From NCBI GenBank assembly GCA_002269645.1, contig NIVC01004515.1, positions 1-43,542 on the forward strand: 43,542 nt of DNA, given 5' to 3'. Source of the DNA: Macrostomum lignano (taxonomy: Eukaryota). The position numbers and the translations under genes are program-made. Below are positions 2,271 to 40,762 of the stretch, piece by piece. Positions within the stretch are counted from its first letter, which is position 1. Each line of letters begins with the position of its first letter. A model generated the notes under the pieces. That model did no database searches, was not told the origin of the DNA, and worked only from the letters and a program-made list of their open reading frames with translations.

Positions 2271-3164
2271 CCAGGGGCTTTAGCACCAGGGGCTTTAGCA
2301 CCAGGGGCTTTAGCACCAGGGGCTTTAGCACCAGGGGCTTTAGCACCAGGGGCTTTAGCACCAGGGGCTTTAGCACCAGGGGCTTTAGCACCAGGGGCTT
2401 TAGCACCAGGGGCTTTAGCACCAGGGGCTTTAGCACCAGGGGCTTTAGCACCAGGGGCTTTAGCACCAGGGGCTTTAGCACCAGGGGCTTTAGCACCAGG
2501 GGCTTTAGCACCAGGGGCTTTAGCACCAGGGGCTTTAGCACCAGGGGCTTTAGCACCAGGGGCTTTAGCACCAGGGGCTTTAGCACCAGGGGCTTTAGCA
2601 CCAGGGGCTTTAGCACCAGGGGCTTTAGCACCAGGGGCTTTAGCACCAGGGGCTTTAGCACCAGGGGCTTTAGCACCAGGGGCTTTAGCACCAGGGGCTT
2701 TAGCACCAGGGGCTTTAGCACCAGGGGCTTTAGCACCAGGGGCTTTAGCACCAGGGGCTTTAGCACCAGGGGCTTTAGCACCAGGGGCTTTAGCACCAGG
2801 GGCTTTAGCACCAGGGGCTTTAGCACCAGGGGCTTTAGCACCAGGGGCTTTAGCACCAGGGGCTTTAGCACCAGGGGCTTTAGCACCAGGGGCTTTAGCA
2901 CCAGGGGCTTTAGCACCAGGGGCTTTAGCACCAGGGGCTTTAGCACCAGGGGCTTTAGCACCAGGGGCTTTAGCACCAGGGGCTTTAGCACCAGGGGCTT
3001 TAGCACCAGGGGCTTTAGCACCAGGGGCTTTAGCACCAGGGGCTTTAGCACCATGGGGCTTTAGCACCAGGGGCTTTAGCACCAGGGGCTTTAGCACCAG
3101 GGGCTTTAGCACCAGGGGCTTTAGCACCAGGGGCTTTAGCACCAGGGGCTTTAGCACCAGGGGC
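2271..3164. repeat. Near-perfect 15-bp minisatellite (CCAGGGGCTTTAGCA)n, ~59 copies
   Basis: 52 identical units (2271-3050), one unit with a 1-nt insertion (CCATGGGG at 3051), 6 more identical units, then a partial unit. Confidence 0.98.
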
Positions 3165-5037: not shown

Positions 5038-6159
5038 ATGCAGCAACTGAGAAGACTGATGAAGCCAGTGCTGTTCCTGATGGCGCTACTGCTGCTGGCC
5101 CTGGGGATGCATCGTGAGATCTTCGGCAGTCGCATCCACTCAGTTATTTCTTCAAAGAGGCGGGCCATGAAAACAAAAGACACAGTGCCAGCGACTGTTG
5201 ACAACCCTCTGCCGTCGGGTGCCTGCGGCGCCTACAGCGAGCTCCGCAGCGTCAACTTCCTGCACAAGTCCATCAGCGAGAGCATCTGCGAAGGCGCCGC
5301 CGCCTACACCATCGTGGACAGCGCGTTTCCGCTCTGCCGACTTAAGCAGCACCTGCCGCACGTGCTCATCGAAGGCGTCAGAGCTGCGAGCATGCAGACC
5401 TTCATCAGAAGCCCCCTCACCCAGAGAAACGTCTCCAGCTTCGTCTACTCGAGTCCCGACCTCATCTCGACCAGCATCCGCACGGAGCACATCTTCGAGG
5501 AGCGGAACGTCCGCATCATGCAGCGAATCATTCGCAACCTGGCCGCCAAGTCGCCCGTCACCTTCGTGGACGTCGGCTCGAACATCGGCGTGTTCAGCCT
5601 GTCGGTCCTCGATCTCGGAGTGCCCGTCATCGCGCTGGACGCGAACATCCGCAACCTGATTCGAATCAAGCTGTCAGCCGAGGCGGCCAATTCGCCTCAC
5701 AAGCTGCACCTGCTGTGGAACTTCGTCAGCAGGCAGGTGTCGCTCATGTACCTGAACTTCCCGAAGGACTGCAACATTGGCGGCGCCACCAAGTTTGGCA
5801 GGGCCGTCGTCGACACGATCCCGGTGATGTCGGCCACCGCGGACTCCATCGTGCCGCTCATCGACACGAAGCTGGTCGTGTTGAAGGTCGACATCGAAGG
5901 AGGCGAAGGCGAGTTCTTCAAGAGCGCGAAGAAGCTGTTCGACACCTTCACGATTCCCGTGGTGCACATGGAGTGGCTAAGGAAGCACATGAGCGAGGAG
6001 GAGCGCCAGTTCATGATCAGCTTCTTCGCTGAGAGGCGCTACAGCGCGAGGAGCATGAACGATCTGACGAAGTTGATCAACATCAGCCACACAGGGTATC
6101 AGGGAGATGACCTTGTTTGGGTGCACAAGGATATTGAGGATGCAGGCGTGCTGCTTTGA
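5038..6159 (+). CDS. FkbM-family (Methyltransf_21) SAM-dependent methyltransferase, paralog A, with N-terminal signal anchor; single coding exon
   Basis: 373-aa ATG ORF with strong GC3 bias. Motif I FVDVGSNIGVFSL, post-I IALDAN, LKVDIEGGE and HMEW motifs typical of FkbM-like enzymes. Hydrophobic stretch VLFLMALLLLALGM after basic residues. Confidence 0.9.
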   Translation: MQQLRRLMKPVLFLMALLLLALGMHREIFGSRIHSVISSKRRAMKTKDTVPATVDNPLPSGACGAYSELRSVNFLHKSISESICEGAAAYTIVDSAFPLCRLKQHLPHVLIEGVRAASMQTFIRSPLTQRNVSSFVYSSPDLISTSIRTEHIFEERNVRIMQRIIRNLAAKSPVTFVDVGSNIGVFSLSVLDLGVPVIALDANIRNLIRIKLSAEAANSPHKLHLLWNFVSRQVSLMYLNFPKDCNIGGATKFGRAVVDTIPVMSATADSIVPLIDTKLVVLKVDIEGGEGEFFKSAKKLFDTFTIPVVHMEWLRKHMSEEERQFMISFFAERRYSARSMNDLTKLINISHTGYQGDDLVWVHKDIEDAGVLL

Positions 6160-6413
6160 ACGAGTCTGTTTATGAGTGCTTATATGATTGAAATTGCACA
6201 TGCTTGAAAACAATGTCGATATGTTGCATGAACCGATTGATTATCTGTAGAACCAGTTGCTGTTCATTTGGCTCTGCTGTGTACTTTTGACTTGATTTTT
6301 TCAGACAATTAAAGTGTTTACTCATGCTTCGAATCGTTACAAAAACGACTTGAAACAGGTTAATCTGTTTTGAGTAACTGGTCCAGTTAATCTGTAACTG
6401 GGCTAACCGGGCC

Positions 6414-6700
6414 AATATGGTCACTGCGCAATAGAAATTGAAATGCCGTTTCGGCCTAAGCACATGGCTGAGTCCAACTGTCTGGGACATTTTTTAATCG
6501 ATAGACGTATTGTTTTTCTATATACATGATGTTTTATCATATTATAAGAGTTGTTATAAGAATATGGTCACTGCGCAATAGAAATTGAAATGCCGTTTCG
6601 GCCTAAGCACATGGCTGAGTCCAACTGTCTGGGACATTTTTTAATCGATAGACGTATTGTTTTTCTATAAACATGATATTTTATCATATTACGAGTATTA
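6414..6700. repeat. 147-bp tandem duplication (2 copies)
   Basis: AATATGGTCACTGCGCAATAG... starts at 6414 and again at 6561, near-identical for ~130 bp. Confidence 0.9.
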
Positions 6701-6964
6701 AGAGTTGAATTTCTGCAAAACTCTTCGCTGGTTCTGTAACATTTAATAACACAATGGTTTAATAGTTATAATTTATTTAAAAAGCGCAGAGATTATCCAT
6801 GCCTTACGATTAGAAAGTCAAAGTGCCACTGTACTGTGTATATTGCTACACAGTATACTCGTACTCGTGGAGAAATACCAGAGCACAGGATGTCTATGGC
6901 CCAATCTTCAGCAATAATTCGTTAACTAGATTTTGGCAGCGTCCATACAGCGAGCAAAAGTCAA

Positions 6965-7060
6965 CATGATGACTCACGACAAAAGACATCCAATTCTACG
7001 CTTTTGGTCGATTTTGAGCTGGGAAAAACTGCACCAGAAGTAGATGAGGAACTCTGAACC
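6965..7060 (+). mobile_element. Possible fragment of a mariner transposase N-terminus
   Basis: Peptide STLLVDFELGKTAPEVDEEL resembles the mariner ..LLYEFxLGxxAxE.. helix. No TIRs identified. Confidence 0.3.
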
Positions 7061-7254
7061 ACACTGCCAAGCTTACGGCACACCCAATGTAGCCTACTTA
7101 TTTCCTAATCGCTGATAATAATATATGGTTGATTACACTTGTAAAACTTAATAGCCAGATGTGCAACCGACAGCTCAGCCGCAGCTATTGGGCGGCGCAT
7201 CTGAAGGCTGCGTACGGCTGTTCAGTCCAAGGACTGGGGGGGGGGGGCGCCACA

Positions 7255-7410
7255 CACAGCCTCAATTACCCCAGCTAATGCTGGTACCCATTCTACAGCT
7301 GGGTGAACTGAAGCAATGCAGAGTCGAGTGCCTTGCTCAAATGACACTAATTGTTCCGAGCAGGTCGAGAATCGAAACCCCGACCTTTCAGTTGTGAGTC
7401 CCAATCACTG
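7255..7410 (+). mobile_element. SINE-like fragment (resembles Nin/Deu-domain SINE core and tail)
   Basis: GCTGGTACCCATTCTACAGCTGGGTGAACTG...GTGCCTTGCTCAA...GAGAATCGAAACCCCGACC resembles, from memory, the widespread invertebrate SINE consensus; not database-checked. Confidence 0.5.
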
Positions 7411-7722
7411 ATAAAGAAGTAATTAAGCTGCTAGGATGAGGCTGCATCAAAGTCTCAAAACGTATACTTGCCAAAGTCAAGTCCCAGCAAAAGTCGAAGC
7501 AAAATTTTGATTTCAACAAATTACATGCAGCATCATCAAAGGAACTAAAATGAATATGGTTAATGACTTCTTAATTGACTAGAGACGCAATCAACAAACT
7601 ATGTGTACGTTTTATCGATTCCAATACTGCTAATTTTGTCCTTAGATACATGTATGTAAAATCATTAGGGAATTAAGCCCTAATTTGCCGATCGAAAGAC
7701 CAGCTAATCTAAAACCGCCTGC

Positions 7723-8892
7723 CTATTGTTTAAAGTCTCCGTGAATCCAAAACAGAGAATCGGTGTTAAAATTCTTGTTCTTTACATTGGCCGGAATGTT
7801 CCAAAGCATTGCAGTCCTCGGGCTGTAGCGCCTCTCAGCGAAGAAGCTGATCATGAACTGGCGCTCCTCCTCGCTCATGTGCTTCCTTAGCCACTCCATG
7901 TGCACCACGGGAATCGTGAAGGTGTCGAACAGCTTCTTCGCGCTCTTGAAGAACTCGCCTTCGCCTCCTTCGATGTCGACCTTCAACACGACCAGCTTCG
8001 TGTCGATGAGCGGCACGATGGAGTCCGCGGTGGCCGACATCACCGGGATCGTGTCGACGACGGCCCTGCCAAACTTGGTGGCGCCGCCCATGTTGCAGTC
8101 CTCCGGGAAGTTCAGGTACATGAGCGACACCTGCCTTCTGACGAAGTTCCACAGCAGGTGCAGCTTGTGAGGCGAATTGGCCGCCTCGGCTGACAGCTTG
8201 ATTCGAATCAGGTTGCGGATGTTCGCGTCCAGCGCGATGACGGGCACTCCGAGATCGAGGACCGACAGGCTGAACACGCCGATGTTCGAGCCGACGTCCA
8301 CGAAGGTGACGGGCGACTTGGCGGCCAGGTTGCGAATGATTCGCTGCATGATGCGGACGTTCCGCTCCTCGAAGATGTGCTCCGTGCGGATGCTGGTCGA
8401 GATGAGGTCGGGACTCGAGTAGACGAAGCTGGAGACGTTTCTCTGGGTGAGGGGGCTTCTGATGAAGGTCTGCACGCTCGCAGCTCTGACGCCTTCGATG
8501 AGCACGTGCGGCAGGTGCTGCTTAAGTCGGCAGAGCGGAAACGCGCTGTCCACGATGGTGTAGGCGGCGGCGCTTTCGCAGATGCTCTCGCTGATGAACT
8601 TGTGCAGGAAGTTCACGTTGCGGAGCTCTCGATAGACATCACACATTTTGGCAGGCAGCGGCCTGTGAATGACCAGCGCGTTTTCCGGAGAAGACGCTTC
8701 TGATGGCTTAATGACGTCAAGCTGTAATGTTGAATTTTGCTTTCGGGTCCGCACTGCTGGTAGCTTTTCTAATCCAGTTAGCATTTTTTTGCCGAAAATT
8801 GCATCGAAGTGCCAGCTGCGGTACATCTCATAAAACAATCCGATTACTACCAACGGCGTTAGAAGGATTATGGGCATCTTCAATTGCCTCAT
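7723..8892 (-). CDS. FkbM-family methyltransferase, paralog B, with N-terminal signal anchor; single coding exon
   Basis: ORF track starts at TTG 8910; first ATG is 8892 (MRQLKMPIILLTPLVVIGLFY..). Same catalytic motifs as paralog A. Convergent with A. Confidence 0.9.
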   Translation of the reverse strand: MRQLKMPIILLTPLVVIGLFYEMYRSWHFDAIFGKKMLTGLEKLPAVRTRKQNSTLQLDVIKPSEASSPENALVIHRPLPAKMCDVYRELRNVNFLHKFISESICESAAAYTIVDSAFPLCRLKQHLPHVLIEGVRAASVQTFIRSPLTQRNVSSFVYSSPDLISTSIRTEHIFEERNVRIMQRIIRNLAAKSPVTFVDVGSNIGVFSLSVLDLGVPVIALDANIRNLIRIKLSAEAANSPHKLHLLWNFVRRQVSLMYLNFPEDCNMGGATKFGRAVVDTIPVMSATADSIVPLIDTKLVVLKVDIEGGEGEFFKSAKKLFDTFTIPVVHMEWLRKHMSEEERQFMISFFAERRYSPRTAMLWNIPANVKNKNFNTDSLFWIHGDFKQ

Positions 8893-9009
8893 TGTTGAGC
8901 GCACCTGCAATGTTTTTAAAGATTTAATTACGTTTTTTCCAGCGGGGCACGAGGGATGAACAGTTCCAGGGGTCTGGCAATAATCTGAAACAAGCTTTTG
9001 CGGCTAAAA

Positions 9010-9538
<529 letters not shown>

Positions 9539-11995: not shown

Positions 11996-13170
11996 CCTTT
12001 GTCCCTATCTCTGATTCCTCATGTTGGAATCCGAATCCCCGATTCTTAATTCCCTATCCCTGATTCCTCATGTTGGAATCCGAATCCCCGATTCTTAATT
12101 CCCTATCCCTGATTCCTCATGTTGGAATCCGAATCCCCGATTCTTAATGCCCTATCCCTGATTCCTCATGTTGGAATCCGAATCCCCGATTCTTAATTCC
12201 CTATCCCTGATTCCTCATGTTGGAATCCGAATCCCCGATTCTTAACTCCCTATCCCTGAATCCTCATGTTGGAATCCGAATCCCCGATTCTTATTTCCCT
12301 ATCCCTGATTCCTCATGTTGGAATCCGAATCCCCGATTCTTAATTCCCTATCCCTGATTCCTCATGTTGGAATCCGAATCCCCGATTCTTAATGCCCTAT
12401 CCCTGATTCCTCATGTTGGAATCCGAATCCCCGATTCTTAATTCCCTATCCCTGATTCCTCATGTTGGAATCCGAATCCCCGATTCTTAACTCCCTATCC
12501 CTGAATCCTCATGTTGGAATCCGAATCCCCGATTCTTAATTCCCTATCCCTGATTCCTCACGTTGGAATCCGAATCCCCGATTCTTAATTCCCTATCTCT
12601 GATTCCTCATGTTGGAATCCGAATCCCCGATTCTTAATGCCCTATCCCTGATTCCTCATGTTGGAATCCGAATCCCCGATTCTTAACTTCCTATCCCTGA
12701 ATCCTCATGTTGGAATCCGAATCCCCGATTCTTAATTCCCTATCCCTGATTCCTCATGTTTAGAATCTGAATCCCCGATTCTTAATCCCCTATCCCTGAT
12801 TCCTCACGTTGGAATCCGAATCCTCGATTCTTAATCCCCTATCCCTGATTCCTCATATGGAATCCGAATCCCCGATTCTTAATCCCCTATCCCTGATTCC
12901 TCATATGGAATCCGAATCCCCGATTCTTAATTCCCTATCCCTGATTCCTCATATGGAATCCGAATCCTCGATTCTTAATGCCCTATCCCTGATTCCTCAT
13001 GTTGGAATCCGAATCCCCGATTCTTAATCCCCTATCCCTGATTCCTCATATGGAATCCGAATCCCCGATTCTTAATTCCCTATCCCTGATTCCTCATATG
13101 GAATCCGAATCCTCGATTCTTAATCCCCTATCCCTGATTCCTCATGTTGGAATCCGAATCCCCGATTCTT
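11996..13170. repeat. 49-bp minisatellite (TCCCTATCCCTGATTCCTCATGTTGGAATCCGAATCCCCGATTCTTAAT), switching to a 48-bp variant after ~12850
   Basis: TGATTCCTCA recurs at 12061, 12110, ... The CATATGG variant is 48 bp and creates the short ORFs 12809 and 12999. Confidence 0.95.
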
Positions 13171-13576
13171 ATGCTAGGGACGCTAGTTCAAGAAGCATTG
13201 TAGTATTTTGTCTTGTACGCTAGTGCGCACTAGCGTTCCACACTCACCCCACACCCACCCTTCTCCGCTCGTGAACTGGCCCCCGTTAAGGGAGCCCACC
13301 CCACCGTGGGCTGGGTCCCGTTAACGGGCTATTTTTAGCGCGGGATGGGCTCCGCTAGCGGCGGGCCGTTAGGTGTCGAATGATGTCTAAAAAAATACTC
13401 AGAATTCATTGCGATGCTTTCATTTGAACTGGGCTGCATCTGCGAGCCAGCTATCTGATCGCTAAAATATTTCTGGCTTCTATTGAAAAAAGATAAAAAC
13501 CATACAAATGATAGGATTAAAACTCATAAATTATTAAAATTCCCAAATTGCTTCCTAGAATTTCAGATTCATCCGC

Positions 13577-15572: not shown

Positions 15573-16721
15573 TCACTTTAAAGACTCGAGCACGGGACCA
15601 AGATAGTCGTTGCGGATCCAGAGCAAACGGTCGCAATGAAATTTCCGGTCCCCTGGATTAGCAACAACTATTGATGTGTCCTTGATGCTCCTAGGGCTGT
15701 ATCGTCTCTCAGCGAAGAAGCTGATCATGAACTGGCGCTCCTCCTCGCTCATCTGCCAATTGAGCCACTTCATGTGCACCACGGGAATCGTGAAGGTGTC
15801 GAACAGCTTCTGCGCGCTCTTGAAGAACTCGCCTTCGCTTCCTTCGATGGCAACTTTTAACACAACCAGCTTGGTGTCGATGAGCGGCATGATGGAGTCC
15901 GCGGTGGCCGACATCACCGGGATCGTGTCGACGACAGATTTGCCGCCAAAGTTGGTGGCGCCGCCGACGTTGCACTGCTGAGGGAAGTTCAGGTAGGTGA
16001 AATAAACTCGCGTGCTGACGAAGTTCCACAGCAGCTGCAGCTTGTGAGGCGAATTGGCCGCCTCGGCTGACAGCTTGATTCGAATCAGGTTGCGGATGTT
16101 CGCGTCCAGCGCGATGACGGGCACTCCGAGATCGAGGACCGACAGGCTGAACACGCCGATGTTCGAGCCGACGTCCACGAAGGTTACTAAAGATTTTTCT
16201 TGAAACTTCTTTACAATTTTCTGCAAAATGAGAACGCTATTGGCCTCGAATATATGCGACTGATAGACCGCTGCCGAGATGATGTCCTTGCACGAATAGA
16301 TGAAGCACGGTATGCTTCTCTGGCTAACGGGACTCTTCAGTGTCGCTTCCCTGCTTCCAGCTTTTACGCCTTTGATGAGCACCTGCGGCAGGTGCTGCTT
16401 GAGTCGGCAGAGCGGAAACGCGCTGTCCACGATGGTGTAGGCGGCGGCGCCTTCGCAGATGCCCTCGCTGATGGACTTGTGCAGGAAGTTCACGTTGCGG
16501 AGCTCGCTGTAGGCGCCGCAGGGACCCGACGGCAGAGGGTTGTCAATAGTCGCTGGCACTGTGCCGTGATCTGGCACAAGATCATTGTTATCTTTGGAGC
16601 AGATCTGCATGAGGCTGCCGCTGACCAGCAGTTTGTAGATAATAATAGCCAACATCATTGCCAGAATAATTGTTATTATGTCTTTCAGTACTCGACGTCT
16701 TTGCTGTCGGGCTAGGTTCAT
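15573..16721 (-). CDS. FkbM-family methyltransferase, paralog C, with N-terminal signal anchor; carries D>A and E>K motif changes
   Basis: 382-aa ATG ORF. TM segment IITIILAMMLAIIIYKLLV; FVDVGSNIGVFSL intact; LKVAIEG and HMKW in place of LKVDIEG and HMEW. Confidence 0.88.
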   Translation of the reverse strand: MNLARQQRRRVLKDIITIILAMMLAIIIYKLLVSGSLMQICSKDNNDLVPDHGTVPATIDNPLPSGPCGAYSELRNVNFLHKSISEGICEGAAAYTIVDSAFPLCRLKQHLPQVLIKGVKAGSREATLKSPVSQRSIPCFIYSCKDIISAAVYQSHIFEANSVLILQKIVKKFQEKSLVTFVDVGSNIGVFSLSVLDLGVPVIALDANIRNLIRIKLSAEAANSPHKLQLLWNFVSTRVYFTYLNFPQQCNVGGATNFGGKSVVDTIPVMSATADSIMPLIDTKLVVLKVAIEGSEGEFFKSAQKLFDTFTIPVVHMKWLNWQMSEEERQFMISFFAERRYSPRSIKDTSIVVANPGDRKFHCDRLLWIRNDYLGPVLESLK

Positions 16722-16996: not shown

Positions 16997-18180
16997 AGTG
17001 AACTGCAACCAAACCACTATCCAACACTTGAGTGAACTACCACAAAGCAACGTTGATCCACTGGGTGAACTGCCACTAAGAAACGTTGATCCATTGAGTG
17101 AACTGCCACTAAGCAACGTTGATCCATTGGGTGAACTACCACTAAGCAACGTTGATCCATTGAGTGAACTGCCACTAAGCAACGTTGATCCACTGGGTGA
17201 ACTGTCACTAAGAAACGTTGATCCATTGAGTGAACTGCCACTAAGCAACGTTGATCCATTGGGTGAACTACCACTAAGAAACGTTGATCCACTGGGTGAA
17301 CTGCCACTAAGAAACGTTGATCCATTGAGTGAACTGCCACTAAGCAACGTTGATCCATTGGGTGAACTACCACTAAGCAACGTTGATCCATTGGGTGAAC
17401 TACCACTAAGCAACGTTGATCCACTGGGTGAACTGCCACTAAGAAACGTTGATCCATTGGGTGAACTGCAACGTTGATCAGTTGAGTGAACTGCCACTAA
17501 GGAACGTTGATGTGGGTGGACTGCCGCTGAGCAACGTTGATCCATTGAGTGAACTGCCACTAAGCAACGTTGATCCATTGGGTGAACTGCCACTAAGCAA
17601 CGTTGATCATTTGAGTGAACTGCCACTAAGCAACGTTGATCCAATGGGTGAACTATACCACTAAGCACCGTTGATCAGTTGAGTGAACTGCCACTAAGCA
17701 ACGTTGATCAGATGAGTGAACTGCCACTAAGCACCGTTGATCAGTTAAGTGAACTGCATCTAAGAAACGTTGATCCATTGAGTGAACTGCCACTAAGCAA
17801 CGTTGATCCATTGAGTGAACTGCAACGCGGATCCATTGGGTGAACTACCACTAAGCAACGTTGATCGGTTGAGTGAACTGCCACTGAGCAACGTTGATTC
17901 ACTGGGTGAACTACCACTAAGCAACGTTGATCAGTTGAGTGAACTGCCACTAAGCACCGTTGATCAGTTAAGTGAACTGCATCTAAGAAACGTTGATCCA
18001 TTGAGTGAACTTCCACTAAGCAACGTTGATCCATTGAGTGAACTGCAACGCGGATCCATTGGGTGAACTACCACTAAGCAACGTTGATCGGTTGAGTGAA
18101 CTGCCACTGAGCAACGTTGATTCACTGGGTGAACTACCACTAAGCAACGTTGATCGGTTGAGTGAACTACTACTGAGCAC
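16997..18180. repeat. 33-bp minisatellite (GTGAACTGCCACTAAGCAACGTTGATCCATTGR)n
   Basis: Period 33; the open frames DPLGELPLSNV etc. are repeat artefacts. Confidence 0.95.
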
Positions 18181-20038: not shown

Positions 20039-21126
20039 ATGAAGCAAAACAATCATCAGCATCAGCAGCAGCAGAAAGCCGTCGAGTTCAACATCGGCGG
20101 CAAAACCGTAGCCGTATCGCCCAACATCGCCGACAAGTTTCCAAATTGTCGATTAGCCCGCCTACTGTCCGGCCGAGAATTGGCCGGCTGCGTTGATTCG
20201 ACTGGCCGGCCGTTTCTCGACCGGAATCCGGCTGTGTTTGGGATGGCGCTGGACTTTCTCAGGCACGGCGGTCGCTTCCTACCGCCCTGCGATTTGCAAC
20301 GATTTGACGACTGGGAGCGGCTCGAGGCCGAGGCCGAGTACCTGCAGATGCCTGAGCTGGCTGCTCAACTGCGCACTCTGCAGCGCGATCGAGAGGGCGC
20401 CTCAGCATCCGCTGATCTGCCCAGGCGGAAGCAGCAATCCAGCCTGCAGCAGCAGCAGCAGCAGGTGGCATTTCTGGAGGTTGGCGAGTCTGAGCAGGCA
20501 GTGTTCTTGGAGGGTGCCGATCCGCAGAGGCAACTCGTGCTTCTGGTGAGCAGCCCGATTATAGCAATCATAAATTGGATTGCTAATCTAGCCAATCAAG
20601 TATAGATTTTATGAATGGCTTGCTAATCTAGCCAATCAAGTATGAATTTTATGAATGGATTGCTAATCTAGCCAATCAACTATAAATTTTATGAATGGAT
20701 TGCTAATCTAGCCAATCAACTATAAATTTTATGAATGGATTGCTAATCTAGCCAATCAACTATAAATTTTATGAATGGATTGCTAATCTAGCCAAGCGTA
20801 CCTGCACACTTCAGGGCGAGTTGGGCGCGCTTCGCGAAGTGCTCCGCAAGCGGCTGAACCCGCTGCTGCCCCGACTGATGCAGCGAGCCGACGAGCTGTC
20901 AGAGCGACGCGGTCGCCGCTTGCACGACGCCGACTCGGTGAGCCTCAGCCTGCCGGAGGGCCACCTCAGAGAGCGCGGCCTCGGATCGCTGGACGAGTTC
21001 AGGCCGGTCCTGCTGCGGGAGGTGGCCCGGCTGGCTTTGCCTGGGCCGCCAGGACAACTCACGCTGAGCACAGGGGAGCACCGGCTGCTATTCCGGGTGC
21101 CCGCCTGCGAGGACCTTGCCAACTAA
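20039..21126 (+). CDS. KCTD-type BTB/POZ (T1 tetramerisation) domain protein, 2 exons (20039-20545, 20815-21126), 272 aa
   Basis: VEFNIGGK...FPNCRLARLL...PFLDRNPAVFGMALDFLR...LEAEAEYLQMPEL is a BTB_2/T1 signature. Phase-0 donor CTG/GTGAGC at 20546 and acceptor CTTCAG/GGC at 20814 join the two ORFs in frame. Confidence 0.88.
20575..20795. repeat. 40-bp intronic minisatellite (TGCTAATCTAGCCAATCAASTATAAATTTTATGAATGGAT), ~5.5 copies
   Basis: TGCTAATCTA at 20581, 20621, 20661, 20701, 20741, 20781. Confidence 0.95.
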
Positions 21127-22338: not shown

Positions 22339-25300
22339 TTAAAACGATTGGTGATAATGAGAGTTGAATTTTTGAAATTTGCCAAACTTTTGCCTGTGGT
22401 CTTGTCTGTGCTGTTGCTGTTGTTGCTGCTGCTGCGGCGGCTGCTGGTACATCTGCTGAAATGGCGGACCCTGCGGCGGCGGCGGCGGCGGCTGTTGCTG
22501 CTGTCTCTGCAAATAGGATCGATTCTTGTGATGGAGAGTTTTCTTATGCAGACGAAACGATTGACAATCGCTGCTAGGGGTGGCCGTGACGGCGGCGGCT
22601 GCCACAGCAGCGGCAGCGGAGGCAGCGGCCGCGGCGGCTGCGGTGGCGGCTTTCAGGTGTTCAGCAGATTCGTAGTGCCGTTTAGCCGCAGCCAGAGTGC
22701 AGATTTGAATGTTGCAGGAGCTGCAGACTATTGGCGACTGACCGGTCTGGCGCAGGCGGGCGATTTATGGGAAGCTAGTGAAATTATTTTTCCAGTATTT
22801 TCAGTTCTTATTCTTTAATCCTAGGCTCCTAGAATTCGTGGACTAAAGAGTTTTTCTTAGAATGAGTGTCAAAAAGGCATTTCTTAGAAACAGTTCTTAG
22901 AAAATTGAAGGCAAGCTTCTAAGAAACAAACAAGACAAATTTCCAAGAAACAGTAAGGGCAAGATTCTTAAAAACAATTAAAGCGAGATTCTTAGAAACA
23001 ACCAAGACAATATTCTAAGAAACAATCAGGACAAGATTCTTAGAAACAATTAAGAAAAAATTCTTAGAAACAATCACAACAAGACTTAGCTACAGTCAAG
23101 ACAAGATTCTAAGAAAAAATCACGACAAGATTCTTAGAAACATTCATGACGAGATTCTTAGAAACAACCAAGACAATATTCTAAGAAACAATCAGGACAA
23201 GATTCTTAGAAACAATTAAGAAAAAATTCTTAGAAACAATCACAACAAGACTTAGCTACAGTCAAGACAAGATTCTTAGAAACAATCACGACAAGACTTA
23301 GCAACAGTCAAGACAAAAAACAATCACGACAAGACTTAGCAACAGTCAAGACAAGAAATCACGACAAGACTTAGCAACAGTCAAGACAAAAAACAATCAC
23401 GACAAGACTTAGCAACAGTCAAGACAAGAAATCACGACAAGACTTAGCAACAGTCAAGACAAGAAATCACGACAAGACTTAGCAACAGTCAAGACAAAAA
23501 ACAATCACGACAAGACTTAGCAACAGTCAAGACAAGAAATCACGACAAGACTTAGCAACAGTCAAGACAAGAAATCACGACAAGACTTAGCAACAGTCAA
23601 GACAAGAAATCACGACAAGACTTAGCAACAGTCAAGACAAGATTCTAAGAAAAAATCACGACAATATTCTTAGAAACATTCATGACGAGATTCTTAGAAA
23701 CAACCAAGACAATATTCTAAGAAAAAATCAAGACAATAAAAACTAAAGACGCTATCTCACCTGCCAAGCTGATTTAGAAGAATGAGCCAGGCCGTTATTA
23801 CTTTTGTTGCCAGGCGGCGAGACAATAGCAACCGTTTCCATAGAAGCTGACTGTTGTTGACAAGGTTGATTAAAGGTATCGATTTTATTTGAAGGTTCAG
23901 CAGTTCCAGCAGAACCGGCCATGTTAGAATGATCCGAATTTGCGTTGGCTGCACCTCTTTCTACCAACGCTGATGAGGCAGCGCCGGTCTGATGACCAGA
24001 CGGGTTCTGCGGTTGCCGAATCCCGTCTCGCTGCTTGGGAAGGCAGTGGGAGGCGATTTTGGGTTGGGGCTCGCTGTGTCACTTTTCTAGTCACTCCAGA
24101 GTCACTCTTCTAGTCACTCCAGAGTCACTCTTCTAGTTACTCCAGAGTCACTCTTCTAGTTACTCCAGAGTCACTCTTCTAGTTACTCCAGAGTCACTCT
24201 TCTAGTCACTCCAGAGTCACTCTTCTAGTTACTCCAGAGTCACTCTTCTAGTCACTCCAGACTCCAGAGTCACTCTTCTAGTCACTCCAGACTCCAGAGT
24301 CACTCTTCTAGTCACTCCAGACTCCAGAGTCACTCTTCTAGTCACTCCAGACTCCAGAGTCACTCTTCTAGTCACTCCAGACTCCAGAGTCACTCTTCTA
24401 GTCACTCCAGACTCCAGAGTCACTCTTCTAGTCACTCCAATATCTTTTTAGCCACTCCCTTCTCTTTCTAGTCACTCCCATCTCTTTCTAGTCACTCCCA
24501 TCTCTTTCTAGTCACTCCGACCTCTTTCTAGTCACTCCCATCTCTTTCTAGTCACTCCCATCTCTTTCTAGTCACTCCCATCTCTTTCTAGTCACTCCCA
24601 TCTCTTTCTAGTCACTCCCATCTCTTTCTAGTCACTCCCATCTCTTTCTAGTCACTCCCATCTCTTTCTAGTCACTCCCATCTCTTTTTAGTCACTCCCA
24701 TCTCTTTCTAGTCACTCCCATCTCTTTCTAGTCACTCCCATCTCTTTCTAGTCACTCCCATCTCTTTCTAGTCACTCCCATCTCTTTCTAGTCACTCCCA
24801 TCTCTTTTTAGTCACTCCCATCTCCTAATCACTCACTCCAACATGATTCCCAGGCGGTCTCCGATCAAAGCCAGCGGATTCGCTGGGCCGGCCCGCGCCA
24901 GTGTTGGCCAAATGGTTGGGACTGGTCAGATGGCCGCGAATCTCCATAGCCGAAGAGAAGTAGATGCCGCACAGCGAGCAGTGCCGCTGCTGGATCAGAT
25001 GCCGCATGTCCGGGTCGGCGTTCATTGCGGCCACATCGACGCCTTTGAGAAATGTGGCCTGGTCGGTTTTTTAAAATTAAGAAACATAATATGCCATTTA
25101 TAACAATAATGTCACTCCAGTATCTATCCCGTCACATTAATGTCACTCCAGTGTCTATCCCGTCACATTAATGTCACTCCAGTGTCTATCCAGTCACATT
25201 AATGTCACTCCAGTGTCTATCCAGTCACATTAATGTCACTCCAGTGTCTATCCCGTCACATTAATGTCACTCCAGTGTCTATCCAGTCACATTAATGTCA

Positions 25301-27129
25301 CTCCAGTGTCTATCCAGTCACATTAATGTCACTCCAGTGTCTATCCCGTCACATTAATGTCACTCCAGTGTCTATCCCGTCACATTAATGTCACTCCAGT
25401 GTCTATCCCGTCACAATGTCACTCCAGTGTCTATCCCGTCACATTAATGTCACTCCAGTGTCTATCCCGTCACAATGTCACTCCAGTGTCTATCCCGTCA
25501 CATTAATGTCACTCCAGTGTCTATCCAGTCACATTAATGTCACTCCAGTGTCTATCCAGTCACATTAATGTCACTCCAGTGTCTATCCCGTCACAATGTC
25601 ACTCCAGTGTCTATCCAGTCACATTAATGTCACTCCAGTGTCTATCCAGTCACATTAATGTCACTCCAGTGTCTATCCAGTCACATTAATGTCACTCCAG
25701 TGTCTATCCCGTCACAATGTCACTCCAGTGTCTATCCAGTCACATTAATGTCACTCCAGTGTCTATCCAGTCACATTAATGTCACTCCAGTTTCTATCCA
25801 GTCACATTAATGTCACTCCAGTGTCTATCCCGTCACAATGTCACTCCAGTGTCTATCCAGTCACATTAATGTCACTCCAGTGTCTATCCAGTCACATTAA
25901 TGTCACTTCAGTGTCTATCCCGTCACAATGTCACTCCAGTGTCTATCCAGTCACATTAATGTCACTCCAGTGTCTATCCAGTCACATTAATGTCACTCCA
26001 GTGTCTATCCGTCACAATGTCACTCCAGTGTCTATCCAGTCACATTAATGTCACTCCAGTGTCTATCCAGTCACATTAATGTCACTCCAGTGTCTATCCA
26101 GTCACATTAATGTCACTCCAGTGTCTATCCAGTCACATTAATGTCACTCCAGTGTCTATCCAGTCACATTAATGTCACTCCAGTGTCTATCCAGTCACAT
26201 TAATGTCACTCCAGTGTCTATCCCGTCACAATGTCACTTCAGTGTCTATCCAGTCACATTAATGTCACTCCAGTGTCTATCCAGTCACATTAATGTCACT
26301 CCAGTGTCTATCCCGTCACAATGTCACTCCAGTGTCTATCCAGTCACATTAATGTCACTCCAGTGTCTATCCAGTCACATTAATGTCACTCCAGTGTCTA
26401 TCCAGTCACATTAATGTCACTCCAGTGTCTATCCCGTCACAATGTCACTCCAGTGTCTATCCAGTCACATTAATGTCACTCCAGTGTCTATCCAGTCACA
26501 TTAATGTCACTCCAGTGTCTATCCAGTCACATTAATGTCACTCCAGTGTCTATCCCGTCACAATGTCACTTCAGTGTCTATCATGTCTCATTAATGTCAC
26601 TCTCATTGTCTACCCTGTCACATTAATGTCACATGTCTATCCCATCACATTAATATCTAAGGATCTAGTGAATGCCTATCCTATCAGCATGAAAGATTAA
26701 TTTTTCAATTTTAGCCAGCCAGCCGCATACCTCATCGATAGCATTAGCCCTGGCCATCTCCAGGTCGTGCATATTGCTAGTATAATACACTCCATTCCTA
26801 AGCACAGCAACAGGCAAATTCGGCCTATCAGGATTAGACAGCGCCCACTGACGCCTGTGCTTCTGACCATTGAAATGCTGCATAGCGATTGTCGGCGAGC
26901 CTAGCGCAGAGTTACAAATGTGACAATGCGATTCGTTTAATATCTGACGAAACTCCGGCCAGGCGTCCGGTGAAATTTTCAACAATTTATTGCCGCCGAA
27001 TTTCGGGCGCTTCTGATTGCCGCCGCCAAAATGAGCCGCTCGTTTCTTATTACTACTGCCATAGTTATTAGTAGTATGCATAGCATTTGATGAGGGCGGT
27101 CCGCCGCCGCCTCCGTTGCTTGGATTCAT
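22339..27129 (-). CDS. Matrin/U1-type C2H2 zinc-finger protein with three widely spaced fingers (ZMAT/JAZ/ZNF385-like, putative RNA/dsRNA binder); exons 27129-26731, 25058-24837, 24030-23761, 22746-22339
   Basis: Fingers CHICNSALGSPTIAMQHFNGQKH, CSLCGIYFSSAMEIRGHLTSPNH, CSSCNIQICTLAAAKRHYESAEH. All three introns are GT-AG and phase 0 (donors GTATGC 26730, GTGAGT 24836, GTGAGA 23760). The exon-3 acceptor (CAG at 24031-24033) and the start ATG are the least certain. C-terminus is poly-Ala and Gln/Pro-rich. Confidence 0.8.
22850..23735. repeat. Intronic composite repeat: TTCTWAGAA-containing ~24-bp units enclosing 35/38-bp (CACGACAAGACTTAGCAACAGTCAAGACAAGAAAT) units
   Basis: Directly visible in intron 3 of the zinc-finger gene. 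Confidence 0.88.
24078..24440. repeat. Intronic 23-bp (GTCACTCCAGAGTCACTCTTCTA) then 30-bp minisatellite
   Basis: Period 23 from 24090; after ~24250 the unit gains ACTCCAG (period 30). Confidence 0.95.
24441..24825. repeat. Intronic 20-bp minisatellite (TCTCTTTCTAGTCACTCCCA)n
   Basis: Directly visible; abuts the donor at 24836. Confidence 0.95.
25108..26655. repeat. Intronic 31/28-bp minisatellite (GTCACATTAATGTCACTCCAGTGTCTATCCM) with a 31+31+28 = 90-bp higher-order pattern in part
   Basis: Two unit lengths differing by ATT. The 90-bp period gives the 30-aa repeats of ORFs 25779 and 26172. Confidence 0.95.
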
Positions 27130-28494: not shown

Positions 28495-29716
28495 CCTGAG
28501 CAGTACTGAGCAGCACACAACTCAGTATTTGAGCAGCACTCAGCAGCACACAACTCAGTATTTGAGCAGCACTCAACAGCACACAACTCAGTATTTGAGC
28601 ATCACTCAACAGCACACAACTCAGTATTTGAGCAGCACTCAGCAGCACACAACTCAGTATTTGAGCATCACTCAACAGCACACAACTCAGTATTTGAGCA
28701 GCACTCAACAGCACACAACTCAGTATTTGAGCAGCACTCAGCAGCACACAACTCAGTATTTGAGCAGCACTCAGCAGCACACAACTCAGTATTTGAGCAT
28801 CACTGAGCAGCACACAACTCAGTATTTGAGCAGCACACAACTCAATATTTGAGCAGCACACAACTCAATATTTGAGCAGCACACAACTCAGTATTTGAGC
28901 ATCACTGAGCAGCACACAACTCAGTATTTAAGCAGCACATTCAACTCAATATTTGAGCAACACATTCAACTCAATATTTGAGCAGCACACAACTCAATAT
29001 TTGAGCAGCACACAACTCAATATTTGAGCAACACATTCAACTCAATATTTGAGCAGCACACAACTCAATATTTGAGCAACACATTCAACTCAATATTTGA
29101 GCAGCACATTCAACTCAATATTTGAGCAGCACACAACTCAATATTTGAGCAGCACATTCAACTCAATATTTGAGCAGCACATTTACCTCAATATTTGAGT
29201 AGCACATTCAACTCAGTATTTGAGCAACACATTCAACTCAATATTTGAGCAGCACATTCAACTCAATATTTGAGCAGCACATTCAACTCAATATTTGAGC
29301 AACACATTCAACTCAATATTTGAGCAACACATTCAACTCAATATTTGAGCAGCACATTTACCTCAATATTTGAGCAGTACATTCAACTCAATATTTGAGC
29401 AACACATTCAACTCAATATTTGAGCAACACATTCAACTCAGTATTTGAGCAGCACATTCAACTCAGTATTTGAGCAACACATTCAACTCAATATTTGAGC
29501 AGCACATTCAACTCAATATTTGAGCAGCACATTCAACTCAATATTTGAGCAACGCATTCAACTCAATATTTGAGCAACACATTCAACTCAATATTTGAGC
29601 AGCACATTTACCTCAATATTTGAGCAGTACATTCAACTCAATATTTGAGCAACACATTCAACTCAATATTTGAGCAACACATTCAACTCAGTATTTGAGC
29701 AGCACATTCAACTCAG
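28495..29716. repeat. Minisatellite grading from 33-bp to 23-25-bp units around a CTCARTATTTGAG core, immediately 3' of the SLBP stop codon
   Basis: 33-bp units 28495-28840, shorter units afterwards; the last unit overlaps the TGA at 29713-29715. Confidence 0.95.
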
Positions 29717-30942
29717 TGCTTGAGCTTCTTGGAGGGCGAGTCGGTGAGGGCGGAGGACCTCTTGCGGGTGAGTCTGGGACAGGCGGCTCCCACAGCGAGT
29801 CCCTGAACGTCGCTGGTCAAGCCGCTATGCAGAGCGTCGGGCTGGACGCTGGAGGTGGCGGCAGGTGCAGCGGTGAGGGTCCGAGAGTCGCCGTCTTCAT
29901 CGTCAGTCGGAAGCTTCGCAGGCAGTGGCGGTGGCGTGGACGATGGCGAGGACCGCGGCGAGATGCCAGCGCTGCTGCTGGCTGCGTCATCCCAGCGATG
30001 AAGCTGCAGCTTCCACTGCTTGACGCAGCCGTCCCAGGCTCTGCGGGACATTCGCACGAACTTGTTCGGAGTCCGCGGGTCGCCCTTCTCCCGCAGAGGC
30101 TTCGGCACCGACTTCACGTAGTTCGCGTACGCCGTCAGGTTCTTCGACTTGTCGATGTCGCGCTGCCGACGCAGCAGAACCGCCTCATCGTCCTCCATCT
30201 CGAAGCAGCTGCCGTCTGAGGCGTTTGAGTTCAGCGATGAGTTCAAGTTGCCTCCCACGCTGCTGTTGAGGCTCTGCGACAGCCGCTTCTGCGCCTGCTT
30301 GGCCTCGTAGCGCTGCCTGTCGAGTCGCGTCGTCTCGAACAGCTCGTCCTGCTTGGCCCAGTCCGTGTACATGGGGATGCGCTCCTTCACCTGGGGATGG
30401 GGTGCGGCTGCTCAGTACCTGGGATACCTGGGATGGAATGCACTCATTCACCTGGGGATGGGTTGCGGCTGCTCAGTACCTGGGATACCTGGGATGGAAT
30501 GCACTCCTTCACCTGAGGATGGGGTGCGGCTGCTCAGTACCTGGGATGGGGTGCAGCTGCTGAGTACCTGTGATACCTGGGATGGGGTGCGGCTGCTCAG
30601 TACCTGGGATACCTGGGATGGGGTGCGGCTGCTCAGTACCTGGGATACCTGGGATTGGGTGCGGCTGCCCAGTACCTGGGATACCTGGGATGCTCCCAAT
30701 ACCCCAGCAAGCGCACGCACCTGCCGCAGCTCAATGCTTGGATCATATCGCAGGTGTCTCGGCACCCCGCCAGCCAGGCTGTTCCGCCCACCAGCAAAGC
30801 CGTGGCGCCGACCGCCCCTGCCAGCCGGTGAGGAGCTGGCGGCAGCGGAGGCTGGCAGCGATGGCCGCGAGATTCGACTCCGGGACCTGCTGGTGTCCCT
30901 GCGGCGCTGTGGCGAGGCCGCCTTCCTGTGACGGGTCTCCAT
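29713..30942 (-). CDS. SLBP: Histone RNA stem-loop-binding protein; exons 30942-30721 (may extend to an acceptor at 31002) and 30390-29713
   Basis: EDDEAVLLRRQRDIDKSKNLTAYANYVKSVPKPLREKGDPRTPNKFVRMSRRAWDGCVKQWKLQLHRWD matches the SLBP RNA-binding domain. Phase-0 intron 30720-30391 (CAG/GTGCGT ... CCCCAG/GTG). The N-terminal start is uncertain. Confidence 0.9.
30375..30690. repeat. SLBP intron repeat: 61-bp triplication spanning the 3' splice site plus 36-bp units (CTGCTCAGTACCTGGGATACCTGGGATGGGGTGCGG)
   Basis: TTCACCTG recurs with CAC ending at 30390, 30451 and 30512. Confidence 0.9.
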
Positions 30943-39680: not shown

Positions 39681-40762
39681 TCACCAACACGTTAGCCGTA
39701 AAAAAAGAGCGCAGCAGTTTCGCTTCACGTCATTGAATGCCGCTGACAAAGATACTTTTCGTACAGTCAAATCACTGACACAGTAGCTAGTGCGGCCACA
39801 GAATACGTATGCAATATAGTGACCACTATTCACGCGACTACCAATGTGAACGATGAATGCACGAAGCTTGTAGCTTCTGCCACTCAAAGTAAGCTTCATC
39901 TCGATGGGTACAACTTTAGTGTTCTTCTCGAATAGTACAGTTTGTCCCTTTCTGCGCTTGACAGAGACTCGGCTAATTCCCATGCATATGTGCTCCGACG
40001 TTGTTGCAAGTGTTTGTGCATAGCTGCACCCCCGACGTCGCAAGTCGGACAACGGATGTCGGTGTGGTCTTGAGTAGAAAACAGTGACTGTCTAATGAGT
40101 GCCGGGAAATCAAGCGAGTCGTCGTGATCAGGATTGATAAACGTAGAATAGTTGCCGTGTCTCTAGGTAGCAGTCGTGTCACTTTGAAACAGGCGGAACA
40201 ACTCAAAGTTGTAGAAATCTACGAAATAAAAAAGATGGATAGGAACAGTACTCATGGTGCAACTGTGAAGACCAACACACAGTGGAAGCGCGATTGAAAG
40301 GTATTCTTTGCCTTCCCATAAGTCAGCAAAGTATATACTGTCTTCGAAGGTAACTTACAAATAAATTTAGATTCAGGATGCAGGCTTAAATCACTTTACT
40401 AAAACGCATTTAAATAGTCATAAACTTAATAAACCGTTCACCCTTACCTCGCAGCTAAATCGCGGTTTGAGCTCAGAAAGAAACAGCATTCCGGTCAGAA
40501 ACTCTAAGGCACAGTTTTGTGCCATAGGATCCATATGAAATGCTTTACTGCACCACTGAAACGCGGCTGAATGCAGCAACAGAACGTGTTTGCCTGTCAT
40601 TAGGCAGTTAAGGAACAGCGCAAGTGGTGAATCTGCATCACACGATAGTGCGCTCGTTAATGTTGCAACCAAGCATTGACTGGCGGCATTGAAAGCACAA
40701 TACGTGCCCGTCGGATTCGGTGGCCCCTCTGGCGACCGTGGCGATAGTGCAGGAAATGACAC
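39681..40762 (-). pseudogene. Ubiquitin-specific protease (USP, peptidase C19) domain, frameshifted, one intron (40447-40219)
   Basis: Cys box PNPTGTYCAFNAASQCL (Cys 40697-40699); QNCALEFL at the QQDAxEFL position; CSAC and CPTC zinc-ribbon pairs; His box YKLRAFIVHIGSRVNSGHYIAYV (His 39819-39821); SDLTV (Asp 39771-39773). The phase-0 GTAAGG...TTTCGTAG intron joins FSCE/ISTTLSCSAC in frame. At least two frameshifts between ~40130 and ~40000. Confidence 0.85.

What the first reader, a model, noticed from the sequence alone, without database searches (positions are those of the whole stretch)
5239..8628. 814-bp ~99% identical inverted core shared by two convergent genes whose ends are highly diverged: ongoing gene conversion with private N- and C-termini
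Seen: identity starts and stops abruptly inside both reading frames (A 5239-6052, B 8628-7815). Outside it the proteins are only remotely alignable (A ..GDDLVWVHKD vs B ..TDSLFWIHGD), yet both ORFs stay open. An old duplication repeatedly homogenised by conversion between inverted arms explains this better than a recent duplication or an assembly palindrome. I counted 9 differences, 8 non-synonymous and 1 synonymous. They cluster at the stem (N/S, F/S, S/G) and in the FVSRQ..FPKDCNIG segment. That ratio does not exceed neutrality significantly, but it is not what purifying selection gives.
Basis: partly seen in the sequence, partly recalled or inferred. Interest (0 to 1): 0.7.

Follow-up and report, generated by a model that had tools for sequence, protein, structure and literature searches.

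The report
Gene conversion between inverted flatworm methyltransferase paralogs
Two neighbouring, tail-to-tail methyltransferase genes of the flatworm Macrostomum keep an 814-bp catalytic core almost identical by repeatedly copying short patches between each other, while their ends have long since diverged. This is a clean but ordinary case of concerted evolution.

Summary
Arms 5239-6052 and 8628-7815 differ at 9 of 814 sites (8 nonsynonymous, 1 synonymous). They lie inside two convergent intronless ORFs, A at 5038-6159(+) and B at 7723-8892(-). The ORF ends are saturated at synonymous sites and share only 20-31% of amino acids.

The window is Macrostomum lignano or a very close relative. A, B and a third paralog C (15573-16721, -) are type-II-membrane FkbM-family (PF05050) methyltransferases.

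Two further copies of the whole locus, in the Mlig_3_7 assembly, have the same structure. This rules out an assembly palindrome.

Across the three copies the core shows:
- 9 polymorphisms shared by A and B, against 0.27 expected (P = 2e-14);
- only 3 fixed differences, all within 55 nt of a tract edge;
- A-B distance within a copy (1.0-1.5%) no larger than same-gene distance between copies (up to 2.3%);
- 44 of 91 site pairs failing the four-gamete test.

C shares separate tracts with A and B. GC3 is 0.84-0.93 in converted segments and 0.52-0.65 elsewhere.

The 8N:1S ratio comes from relaxed constraint on B plus edge-located fixed replacements. It is not demonstrable positive selection.

Verdict: ongoing, patchy, bidirectional interlocus gene conversion, a new example of a well-known process.

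The parts
5038..6159 (+). Gene A: intronless ORF of 373 aa, an FkbM-family (PF05050) methyltransferase. It has an N-terminal hydrophobic signal-anchor (about residues 10-23), a private N-terminus (aa 1-67) and a private C-terminus (aa 339-373).
   Evidence: ORF. Pfam PF05050 at 33.9 bits against a cut-off of 22.7. Closest annotated protein is P0002 of M. lignano, 90% identical. Variation among the three locus copies is 5N:10S, i.e. purifying selection, p=0.0004.
5239..6052 (+). Arm A of the inverted repeat. This is the homogenised core and encodes aa 68-338, the whole predicted catalytic domain.
   Evidence: GC3 is 0.84-0.93 here against 0.65 in A's own termini.
6053..7814 (.). The 1762 nt between the arms. 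It holds A's private 3' coding end (6053-6159), the intergenic spacer, and B's private 3' coding end (7723-7814). Its orientation is the same in all three locus copies.
6414..6691 (.). A 147-bp tandem duplication (1.9 copies) inside the spacer. It is single copy in L003.
7815..8628 (-). Arm B of the inverted repeat. This is the homogenised core and encodes B aa 89-359.
7723..8892 (-). Gene B: intronless ORF of 389 aa counted from the first ATG (the mechanical ORF starts at a TTG at 8910). It is an FkbM-family methyltransferase with its own signal-anchor, an 88-aa private N-terminus and a 30-aa private C-terminus.
   Evidence: (35.9 bits). It is open in all three locus copies. Variation among copies is 14N:11S, p=0.015.
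15573..16721 (-). Gene C: the third paralog, 382 aa, FkbM-family. It is a mosaic partner of A and B.
   Evidence: (24.8 bits). It is 97% identical to the annotated M. lignano protein P0003.
16384..16559 (-). C tract 1. It corresponds to A 5185-5360 and is 96-100% identical to A. It starts 54 nt upstream of the A-B boundary.
16036..16184 (-). C tract 2. It corresponds to A 5560-5708, and the 149 nt are identical in A, B and C. It covers the VDVGSNIGVFS SAM-binding motif and is flanked by a block (A 5361-5559) that is only about 56% identical.
   Evidence: The probability of such a run is about 5e-9.

Best explanation
A, B and C are old tandem paralogs of a flatworm FkbM-family SAM-dependent methyltransferase. 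The enzyme is probably a Golgi or ER type-II membrane protein. A and B lie tail to tail.

I infer that DNA breaks in one copy are repaired by homologous recombination using the other copy as template, giving non-crossover, SDSA-type repair. This transfers short patches of tens to hundreds of bp in both directions. Repeated over time, it keeps the 814-bp catalytic core of A and B about 99% identical, and it keeps two sub-tracts of C identical to them.

The N-terminal anchor/stem and the C-terminal tail are too diverged to support heteroduplex formation, and may also be protected by selection. The edges of the homogenised block are therefore sharp and self-reinforcing, and the only fixed A/B differences sit next to those edges.

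Shown here: the structure, its presence in three independent locus copies, shared polymorphisms, grouping of paralogs by locus copy, the mosaic with C, and purifying selection on A and B. Inferred: the repair pathway, a GC bias of conversion, the membrane topology and the enzyme's substrate.
For: - Structure and contrast: core dS is 0.005, against saturated termini with pS 0.78-0.82.
- Three copies of the locus (window, L003, L005) are colinear at about 97-98% identity and all carry the inverted core. This matches the three paralogous subgenomes at about 2.2% SNP divergence reported for M. lignano (PMC10733133).
- In the core there are 9 shared A/B polymorphisms, 3 fixed differences, 2 A-only and 11 B-only sites. 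The expected chance overlap is 0.27 sites, P(>=9) = 2e-14. Shared polymorphism is the classical indicator of conversion (PMC3924837).
- Distance matrices: in the termini A-B is 47-55% and the same gene between copies is 0-3%. In the core A-B within a copy is 1.1, 1.5 and 1.0%, while B_W-B_5 is 1.8% and A_5-B_W is 2.3%.
- 44 of 91 informative site pairs fail the four-gamete test.
- The patterns need several events in each lineage, in both directions. B_5 has taken A alleles at 5369, 5392, 5778, 5802 and 5868 but not at 5838. B_3 has the A allele at 5838 only. A_3 has the B allele at 5392. The window carries derived alleles in both genes at 5343, 5796 and 5979.
- Mosaic with C: a 149-165-nt stretch is identical in all three genes, next to a block of 56% identity. 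The PHI test including C gives p<0.0005.
- All 3 fixed differences lie within 55 nt of a tract edge, chance 0.0025.
- GC3 is 0.84-0.93 in conversion-active segments and 0.52-0.65 in the termini. In C it is 0.57 in the unconverted central block and 0.86-0.87 in the tracts shared with A.
Against: - Base-level patterns rest on three consensus assemblies of a genome in which 93% of read pairs map to multiple places (PMC10733133). Some single-site 'tracts', such as 5838 in B_3, could be polishing errors.
- The PHI test restricted to the 14 informative A/B sites shows no spatial clustering (p=0.49-0.93). Tract lengths therefore cannot be measured.
- Alleles used to polarise changes may themselves have come from C or from the dispersed A-type copies.
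- Recently spread alleles are mostly S->W (5343, 5796, 5838, 5979), so a GC bias is supported by composition only.
- A and B are not annotated as genes at L003 or L005 in Mlig_3_7, although C is. Their expression is unverified.
Confidence: 0.9

Rival explanations
1. A single conversion or partial-duplication event overwrote B's core with A's once, around the time the three subgenome copies split. Everything since then is independent mutation, so conversion is not ongoing.
For: A-B core divergence (1.0-1.5%) is about the same as the divergence between locus copies (1.2-2.3%). PHI on the A/B sites alone is not significant.
Against: Nine sites are polymorphic with the same two alleles in both genes (P=2e-14). 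Derived alleles shared by A and B occur separately in the window lineage and in the L003/L005 lineages. B_5 and B_3 differ in which A alleles they carry. C shares different tracts.
Confidence: 0.06
2. Assembly or polishing artefact: the inverted arm, or its near-identity, was created by a collapsed assembly or by mis-mapped polishing reads.
For: The genome is highly repetitive and triplicated, and multi-mapping is pervasive (PMC10733133). One copy (A in L003) has a C4/C5 homopolymer indel typical of long-read error.
Against: The same structure is seen in three separately assembled contigs, each with unique diverged flanks, intact ORFs and its own private substitutions. The 3 fixed A/B differences are reproduced in all three. 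Mis-polishing among six near-identical copies should erase rare variants, not place a copy-specific allele in exactly the two arms of one contig.
Confidence: 0.02
3. Selection is the main force, not mechanics. Conversion supplies a shared catalytic core, while diversifying or divergent selection actively keeps the termini and a few core residues (S71N, G86S, A337P, I247M) different. This would give A and B distinct localisation or acceptor specificity, and the 8N:1S ratio would reflect adaptive divergence of B.
For: All 3 fixed core differences are nonsynonymous, whereas shared polymorphisms are 3N:6S. B-only changes are 7N:4S and A-only changes 0N:2S. K243E and I247M fall at variable positions inside the otherwise invariant LNFPxDCNxGGAT motif. 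The termini have stayed open despite saturation.
Against: Fisher tests are not significant (p=0.18-0.22). The fixed differences sit at the tract edges, where conversion is expected to be rare anyway. Overall B shows omega below 1 (14N:11S, p=0.015), which fits relaxed constraint. I247M has been erased by conversion in L005 without loss of the ORF. The model has pLDDT below 50 for residues 231-265, so no structural argument is possible.
Confidence: 0.15

Closest known systems
Concerted evolution of adjacent inverted paralogs by interlocus gene conversion. Examples: the C. elegans hsp16-48 modules (an inverted repeat 416 bp apart) and the adjacent inverted hsp70-7/hsp70-8 genes (PMC3966223). From my own knowledge: the Drosophila Amy and Hsp70Aa/Ab inverted pairs.
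   Same: The paralogs are neighbours in opposite orientation. Coding sequence is homogenised while flanks diverge. Tracts are short: surviving tracts in Caenorhabditis cluster at 50-200 nt, and long identical blocks are read as many short tracts that are not opposed by selection or by 'terminator mutations' (PMC3966223).
   Different: Here homogenisation stops inside the reading frames. Each gene keeps a private N-terminal anchor/stem and a private C-terminal tail. A third, more distant paralog takes part in only two sub-tracts. The gene family, an animal FkbM-type methyltransferase, has no described case that I could find.
The shared-polymorphism framework for duplicated genes undergoing gene conversion (Innan and co-workers; review PMC3924837).
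   Same: The same alleles segregate in both paralogs, there are few fixed differences, and the gene tree groups paralogs by haplotype. All three diagnostic patterns are present.
   Different: The 'sample' here is three subgenome or haplotype copies of a neopolyploid inbred line, not a population. Frequencies and rates therefore cannot be estimated.
Arm-to-arm conversion in large palindromes, such as the human Y-chromosome ampliconic palindromes (own knowledge; compare PMC4772468, listed).
   Same: Inverted arms on one chromosome are kept near-identical by intrachromosomal non-crossover recombination.
   Different: The arms here are 0.8 kb and not tens to thousands of kb. They are confined to part of a coding sequence and are about 99% identical, not above 99.9%. 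The flanks are homologous but anciently diverged, so this is a converted segment of old paralogs and not a young palindrome.
FkbM-family SAM-dependent methyltransferases (Pfam PF05050 Methyltransf_21).
   Same: All three ORFs pass the Pfam gathering score. Motif I reads VDVGSNIGVFS. The predicted fold matches class I methyltransferases such as TrmR, PrmA, COMT-type O-methyltransferases and WbdD at Foldseek E of about 1e-5.
   Different: The match covers only the C-terminal half of the Pfam model (profile positions about 72-173). No solved structure is detectable by sequence. These are animal proteins with a membrane anchor. The closest relatives are other M. lignano paralogs, bivalve proteins and unnamed metagenome sequences. 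The substrate is unknown. A role in glycan O-methylation is my inference only. It rests on methylated N-glycans being discussed in a paper on the planarian Dugesia japonica (PMC3155867), which I listed but did not read in detail.

Membership tests
Interlocus (non-allelic) gene conversion / concerted evolution | A tract of near-identity between paralogs bounded by homologous but much more diverged sequence | tested here: met
   Core has 9 differences in 814 nt and dS 0.005. Termini show 47-55% nt divergence with saturated pS.
Interlocus (non-allelic) gene conversion / concerted evolution | In the tract, paralogs group by genome copy or haplotype and not by gene; outside it they group by gene | tested here: met
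   Distance matrices for four segments across three locus copies.
Interlocus (non-allelic) gene conversion / concerted evolution | Shared polymorphisms between paralogs in excess of chance | tested here: met
   9 observed against 0.27 expected overlapping sites, P=2e-14.
Interlocus (non-allelic) gene conversion / concerted evolution | Mosaic structure or phylogenetic incompatibility that requires exchange | tested here: met
   44 of 91 site pairs fail the four-gamete test. PHI with C included gives p<0.0005. PHI on the 14 A/B sites alone is not significant. Discrete tracts shared with C.
Interlocus (non-allelic) gene conversion / concerted evolution | Direct observation of transfer events (pedigree, mutation-accumulation lines, single-molecule reads) | not testable with these tools
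GC-biased gene conversion | Higher GC at silent sites in converted than in unconverted segments of the same genes | tested here: met
   GC3 is 0.84-0.93 against 0.52-0.65. C's unconverted block is 0.57 against 0.86-0.87 in its converted tracts.
GC-biased gene conversion | Excess of W->S over S->W among alleles spread by conversion | tested here: inconclusive
   Polarisable spread alleles are mostly S->W (5343, 5796, 5838, 5979) with one W->S (5369). At GC3 of about 0.9 nearly all new mutations are S->W, and n is tiny.
FkbM-family methyltransferase (PF05050) | Pfam model match above the gathering score | tested here: met
   A 33.9, B 35.9 and C 24.8 bits against a cut-off of 22.7. The match is partial, covering profile positions about 72-173 of 173.
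FkbM-family methyltransferase (PF05050) | Class I (Rossmann-like) SAM-methyltransferase fold with a glycine-rich motif I | tested here: met
   AlphaFold2 model with pLDDT 61 and pTM 0.65, showing alternating beta/alpha elements at residues 174-340. Foldseek top hits are all class I methyltransferases at E of about 1e-5 with TM 0.3-0.58. The motif VDVGSNIGVFS is invariant across paralogs. Confidence is moderate.
FkbM-family methyltransferase (PF05050) | SAM-dependent methyl transfer to a defined acceptor | not testable with these tools
   This needs an enzyme assay.
Young palindrome / recent inverted duplication | Identity extends through non-coding flanks of the arms and decays gradually or ends at a duplication junction | tested here: not met
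   Identity ends inside both ORFs. Beyond the boundaries the sequences remain homologous at protein level but are saturated at silent sites.

The most novel reading that the evidence does not exclude
The sharp 'shared core, private ends' layout is an actively maintained modular design. Conversion would pool the catalytic domain of two or three Golgi methyltransferases, so that a beneficial or compensating change in one spreads to the others. Selection would keep the anchor/stem, the C-terminal tail and a few residues next to the edges or the motif distinct, so that the enzymes differ in localisation or acceptor choice. A second, independent possibility is that read-through transcription across the convergent pair folds into an 814-bp hairpin RNA. 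That hairpin would feed the RNAi pathway and dampen the whole family. Neither idea is excluded, and neither is tested by the present data.
Probability: 0.12. Interest if true: 0.5.

Novelty: new member of a known kind. Interest (0 to 1): 0.27.

Why it matters
The mechanism adds nothing new. Interlocus gene conversion between adjacent inverted paralogs, with sharp tract edges and raised GC3, is textbook.

It is still useful in three ways.

(1) It is a clear warning for annotating and mapping in M. lignano. Reads from six near-identical 814-bp cores (2 genes x 3 subgenome copies) cannot be placed without the private termini. This may be why A and B lack gene models in Mlig_3_7.

(2) The three subgenome copies of this neopolyploid act as natural replicates. 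They show several independent, bidirectional conversion events within about 2% of divergence. The species could therefore be used to measure conversion rates.

(3) It flags an uncharacterised, lineage-expanded family of membrane-anchored FkbM-type methyltransferases in flatworms and bivalves. These are candidates for the glycan methylation known in these animals.

Tried and rejected
- Recent duplication: rejected, because the termini are homologous but saturated at silent sites.
- Assembly palindrome or polishing collapse: rejected, because three contigs show the same structure with private differences.
- Identity boundaries as exon/intron junctions: rejected. The ORFs run through both boundaries, the annotated relatives are single-exon (gene spans equal 3 x the protein length), and the C-terminal D.L.W motif is conserved in frame.
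- Inversion of the 1.76-kb spacer by crossover between arms: not seen. All three copies are colinear, and every A keeps the A-type C-terminus.
- Positive selection on the 8N:1S differences: not supported. MK-type Fisher tests give p=0.18-0.22, and omega is below 1 for A and B among copies.
- PHI test on the A/B core alone: uninformative, with 14 sites and p=0.49-0.93.
- Exact-sequence look-ups of A, B and C in public assemblies: none on record. No expression evidence could be obtained, and the source assembly was not identified.
- PDB sequence search with the family profile: nothing below E=0.1.
- Rfam and tRNA scans of the window: no hits.
- Structural mapping of the A/B differences: abandoned, because residues 29-74 and 231-265 have pLDDT below 50.
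- Literature search for gene conversion in M. lignano: no relevant paper.


Full report
**What is there.** The window is eukaryotic and full of minisatellites. [quoted passage not shown] The arms lie inside two convergent ORFs, A at 5038-6159(+) (373 aa) and B at 7723-8910(-). The first ATG of B is at 8892, giving 389 aa. A third paralog, C, lies at 15573-16721(-). All three pass the Pfam gathering score for PF05050, the FkbM methyltransferase domain. Each begins with a short basic stretch followed by about 17-20 hydrophobic residues, the pattern of a type II signal-anchor (sequence; topology inferred). An AlphaFold2 model of A has pLDDT 61 and pTM 0.65. Its structural matches are class I SAM-methyltransferases only. 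Sequence search finds no solved relative. More distant relatives are other M. lignano paralogs, bivalve proteins and unnamed metagenome FkbM proteins.

**Checking the observation.** Within 5239-6052 A and B differ at nine sites: 5249, 5253, 5270, 5293, 5392, 5730, 5764, 5778 and 6046. Eight are nonsynonymous and one synonymous, with omega 2.4. The boundaries are abrupt at nucleotide level. Outside them A and B share 31% (N-terminal) and 20% (C-terminal) of amino acids, and synonymous sites are saturated at pS 0.78-0.82.

**Independent copies of the locus.** Look-ups of the annotated relatives returned two contigs of assembly Mlig_3_7 (GCA_002269645.1), L003 and L005. Both are colinear with the window through C, B and A at about 97-98% identity; the neighbouring BTB gene is colinear with the window in L003 and annotated in both contigs. 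Both have the same inverted core. This fits the published finding that about 85% of the M. lignano genome exists as three paralogous subgenome copies with about 2.2% SNP divergence (PMC10733133). All ORFs are intact in all copies, with one exception. A in L003 has C4 instead of C5 at window 5412-5416, which is most simply a long-read homopolymer error. Two other loci carry dispersed A-type single genes: L001/L002 (protein P0002) and L004 (P0001). These have A-like termini, so B's core is of A type.

**Evidence that conversion is repeated and recent.** I aligned A and B from the three copies. The core contains:
- 3 fixed A/B differences (5249, 5293, 6046);
- 9 sites polymorphic for the same two alleles in both genes (5343, 5369, 5392, 5525, 5796, 5802, 5838, 5868, 5979);
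- 2 A-only and 11 B-only polymorphisms.

Chance overlap would be 0.27 sites, and P(>=9) is 2e-14. Shared polymorphism is the standard diagnostic of conversion between duplicates (PMC3924837).

Distances tell the same story. In the termini A-B is 47-55% and the same gene between copies is 0-3%. In the core A-B within a copy (1.1, 1.5, 1.0%) is no larger than the same gene between copies (up to 1.8%, and 2.3% across genes and copies). 44 of 91 informative site pairs fail the four-gamete test.

The patterns need several events in each lineage, in both directions:
- B of L005 carries A alleles at 5369, 5392, 5778, 5802 and 5868 but not at 5838.
- B of L003 carries the A allele only at 5838.
- A of L003 carries the B allele at 5392.
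- The window has derived alleles in both genes at 5343, 5796 and 5979, although the old difference at 5778 between them survived.

**Involvement of C.** A and C are 96-100% identical over A 5185-5360. All three genes are identical over 5560-5708. Yet A and C are only about 56% identical over 5361-5559. A 149-nt identical run has probability of about 5e-9 given the average divergence.

**Why the edges are sharp, and why 8N:1S.** All three fixed differences lie within 55 nt of a tract edge (chance 0.0025). This is expected if conversion needs flanking homology and so becomes rare near diverged sequence. The other differences in the window are one old B allele (I247M, erased by conversion in L005), one shared polymorphism (M119V), and four changes private to B of the window (three nonsynonymous). 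Among the three copies:
- A varies 5N:10S, clear purifying selection (p=0.0004);
- B varies 14N:11S, weaker constraint (p=0.015);
- C varies 17N:7S, not distinguishable from neutral.

MK-type contrasts are not significant (p=0.18-0.22). The ratio therefore reflects relaxed constraint on B plus edge effects. Adaptive divergence remains possible but is not demonstrated.

**Composition.** GC3 is 0.84-0.93 in the homogenised core of A and B, against 0.48-0.67 in their own termini. In C it is 0.86-0.87 in the tracts shared with A but 0.57 in the unconverted central block of the same catalytic domain. That internal control argues against simple codon-usage selection on the domain. It favours a long-term GC bias of conversion, or repeated import of GC-rich A-type sequence. 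The few alleles that spread recently are mostly S->W, so the bias is not shown directly.

**Mechanism.** The most likely process is non-crossover homologous-recombination repair between the inverted copies on one chromosome. It is short-tract and bidirectional, it is blocked where divergence is high, and it has been repeated many times. This step is inferred from general knowledge of interlocus conversion (PMC3966223), not shown here. A crossover between the arms would invert the spacer and swap the genes' 3' ends. No such arrangement is present in the three copies.

**Caveats.** All base-level inferences rest on consensus assemblies of a triplicated, repeat-rich genome. Isolated single-site 'tracts' may be polishing errors. 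The large-scale contrast, the fixed differences reproduced in three contigs, and copy-specific alleles present in both arms of one contig are hard to generate that way. A and B have no gene models at L003 or L005 while C does. No exact matches to the window's proteins exist in the collection, so expression is unverified. The enzyme's substrate is unknown.

**Verdict.** It is a well-resolved new example of a well-known process, concerted evolution of adjacent inverted paralogs with private termini. It occurs in an uncharacterised flatworm methyltransferase family. Interest is modest.

Noticed in passing
window 29713-30390 (-): ORF with a histone RNA hairpin-binding protein (SLBP) RNA-binding domain (PF15247, E=2e-24). 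It is probably the flatworm SLBP gene or one exon of it.
   Followed up: partly
window 20039-20605 (+): BTB_2 (KCTD-like) domain ORF. The syntenic gene is annotated as a 272-aa protein in L003 and L005, which helped establish colinearity of the three locus copies.
   Followed up: partly
window 39681-40052 (-): Short ORF matching the C-terminal part of the ubiquitin carboxyl-terminal hydrolase family (PF00443, E=4.5e-7). It is either a fragment or one exon of a larger gene.
   Followed up: no
window 175-37544, e.g. 2271-3164, 9011-9538, 12002-13171, 25103-26654: More than 25 mini- and microsatellite arrays fill most intergenic space. Several differ strongly in length between the window, L003 and L005. 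For example, the 33-mer array at 17028-18179 is several kb longer in L005.
   Followed up: partly
window 6414-6691: A 147-bp tandem duplication inside the A-B spacer that is single copy in L003. It is a small structural polymorphism between subgenome copies.
   Followed up: partly
L003 about 19990 (equivalent to window 5412-5416): The A copy in L003 has C4 instead of C5, which breaks the frame. A in L005 and in the window are intact. It is probably a long-read homopolymer error but could be a null allele.
   Followed up: partly
L003 16563-17732 and 19141-20264; L005 16722-17891 and 19662-20783: The B and A genes are not annotated in Mlig_3_7 although neighbouring C is. Possible reasons are ambiguous transcript mapping to six near-identical cores, or low expression.
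   Followed up: no
L004 10001-11515: The dispersed A-type gene P0001 (annotated 'partial', 504 aa) contains an internal tandem duplication of roughly 135 codons of the catalytic core. It may be an assembly artefact or a rearranged copy.
   Followed up: no
window 7161-7400: A GC-rich island with a G10 run inside the otherwise AT-rich spacer. It looked vaguely tRNA/SINE-like by eye, but ARAGORN and Rfam found nothing.
   Followed up: partly
L003 18618-20627 vs L005 19137-21149: The A region of L003 and L005 is 99.7% identical. The adjacent B region is 98.8% identical and the rest of the locus about 97%. This hints at a recent exchange between subgenome copies around A.
   Followed up: no
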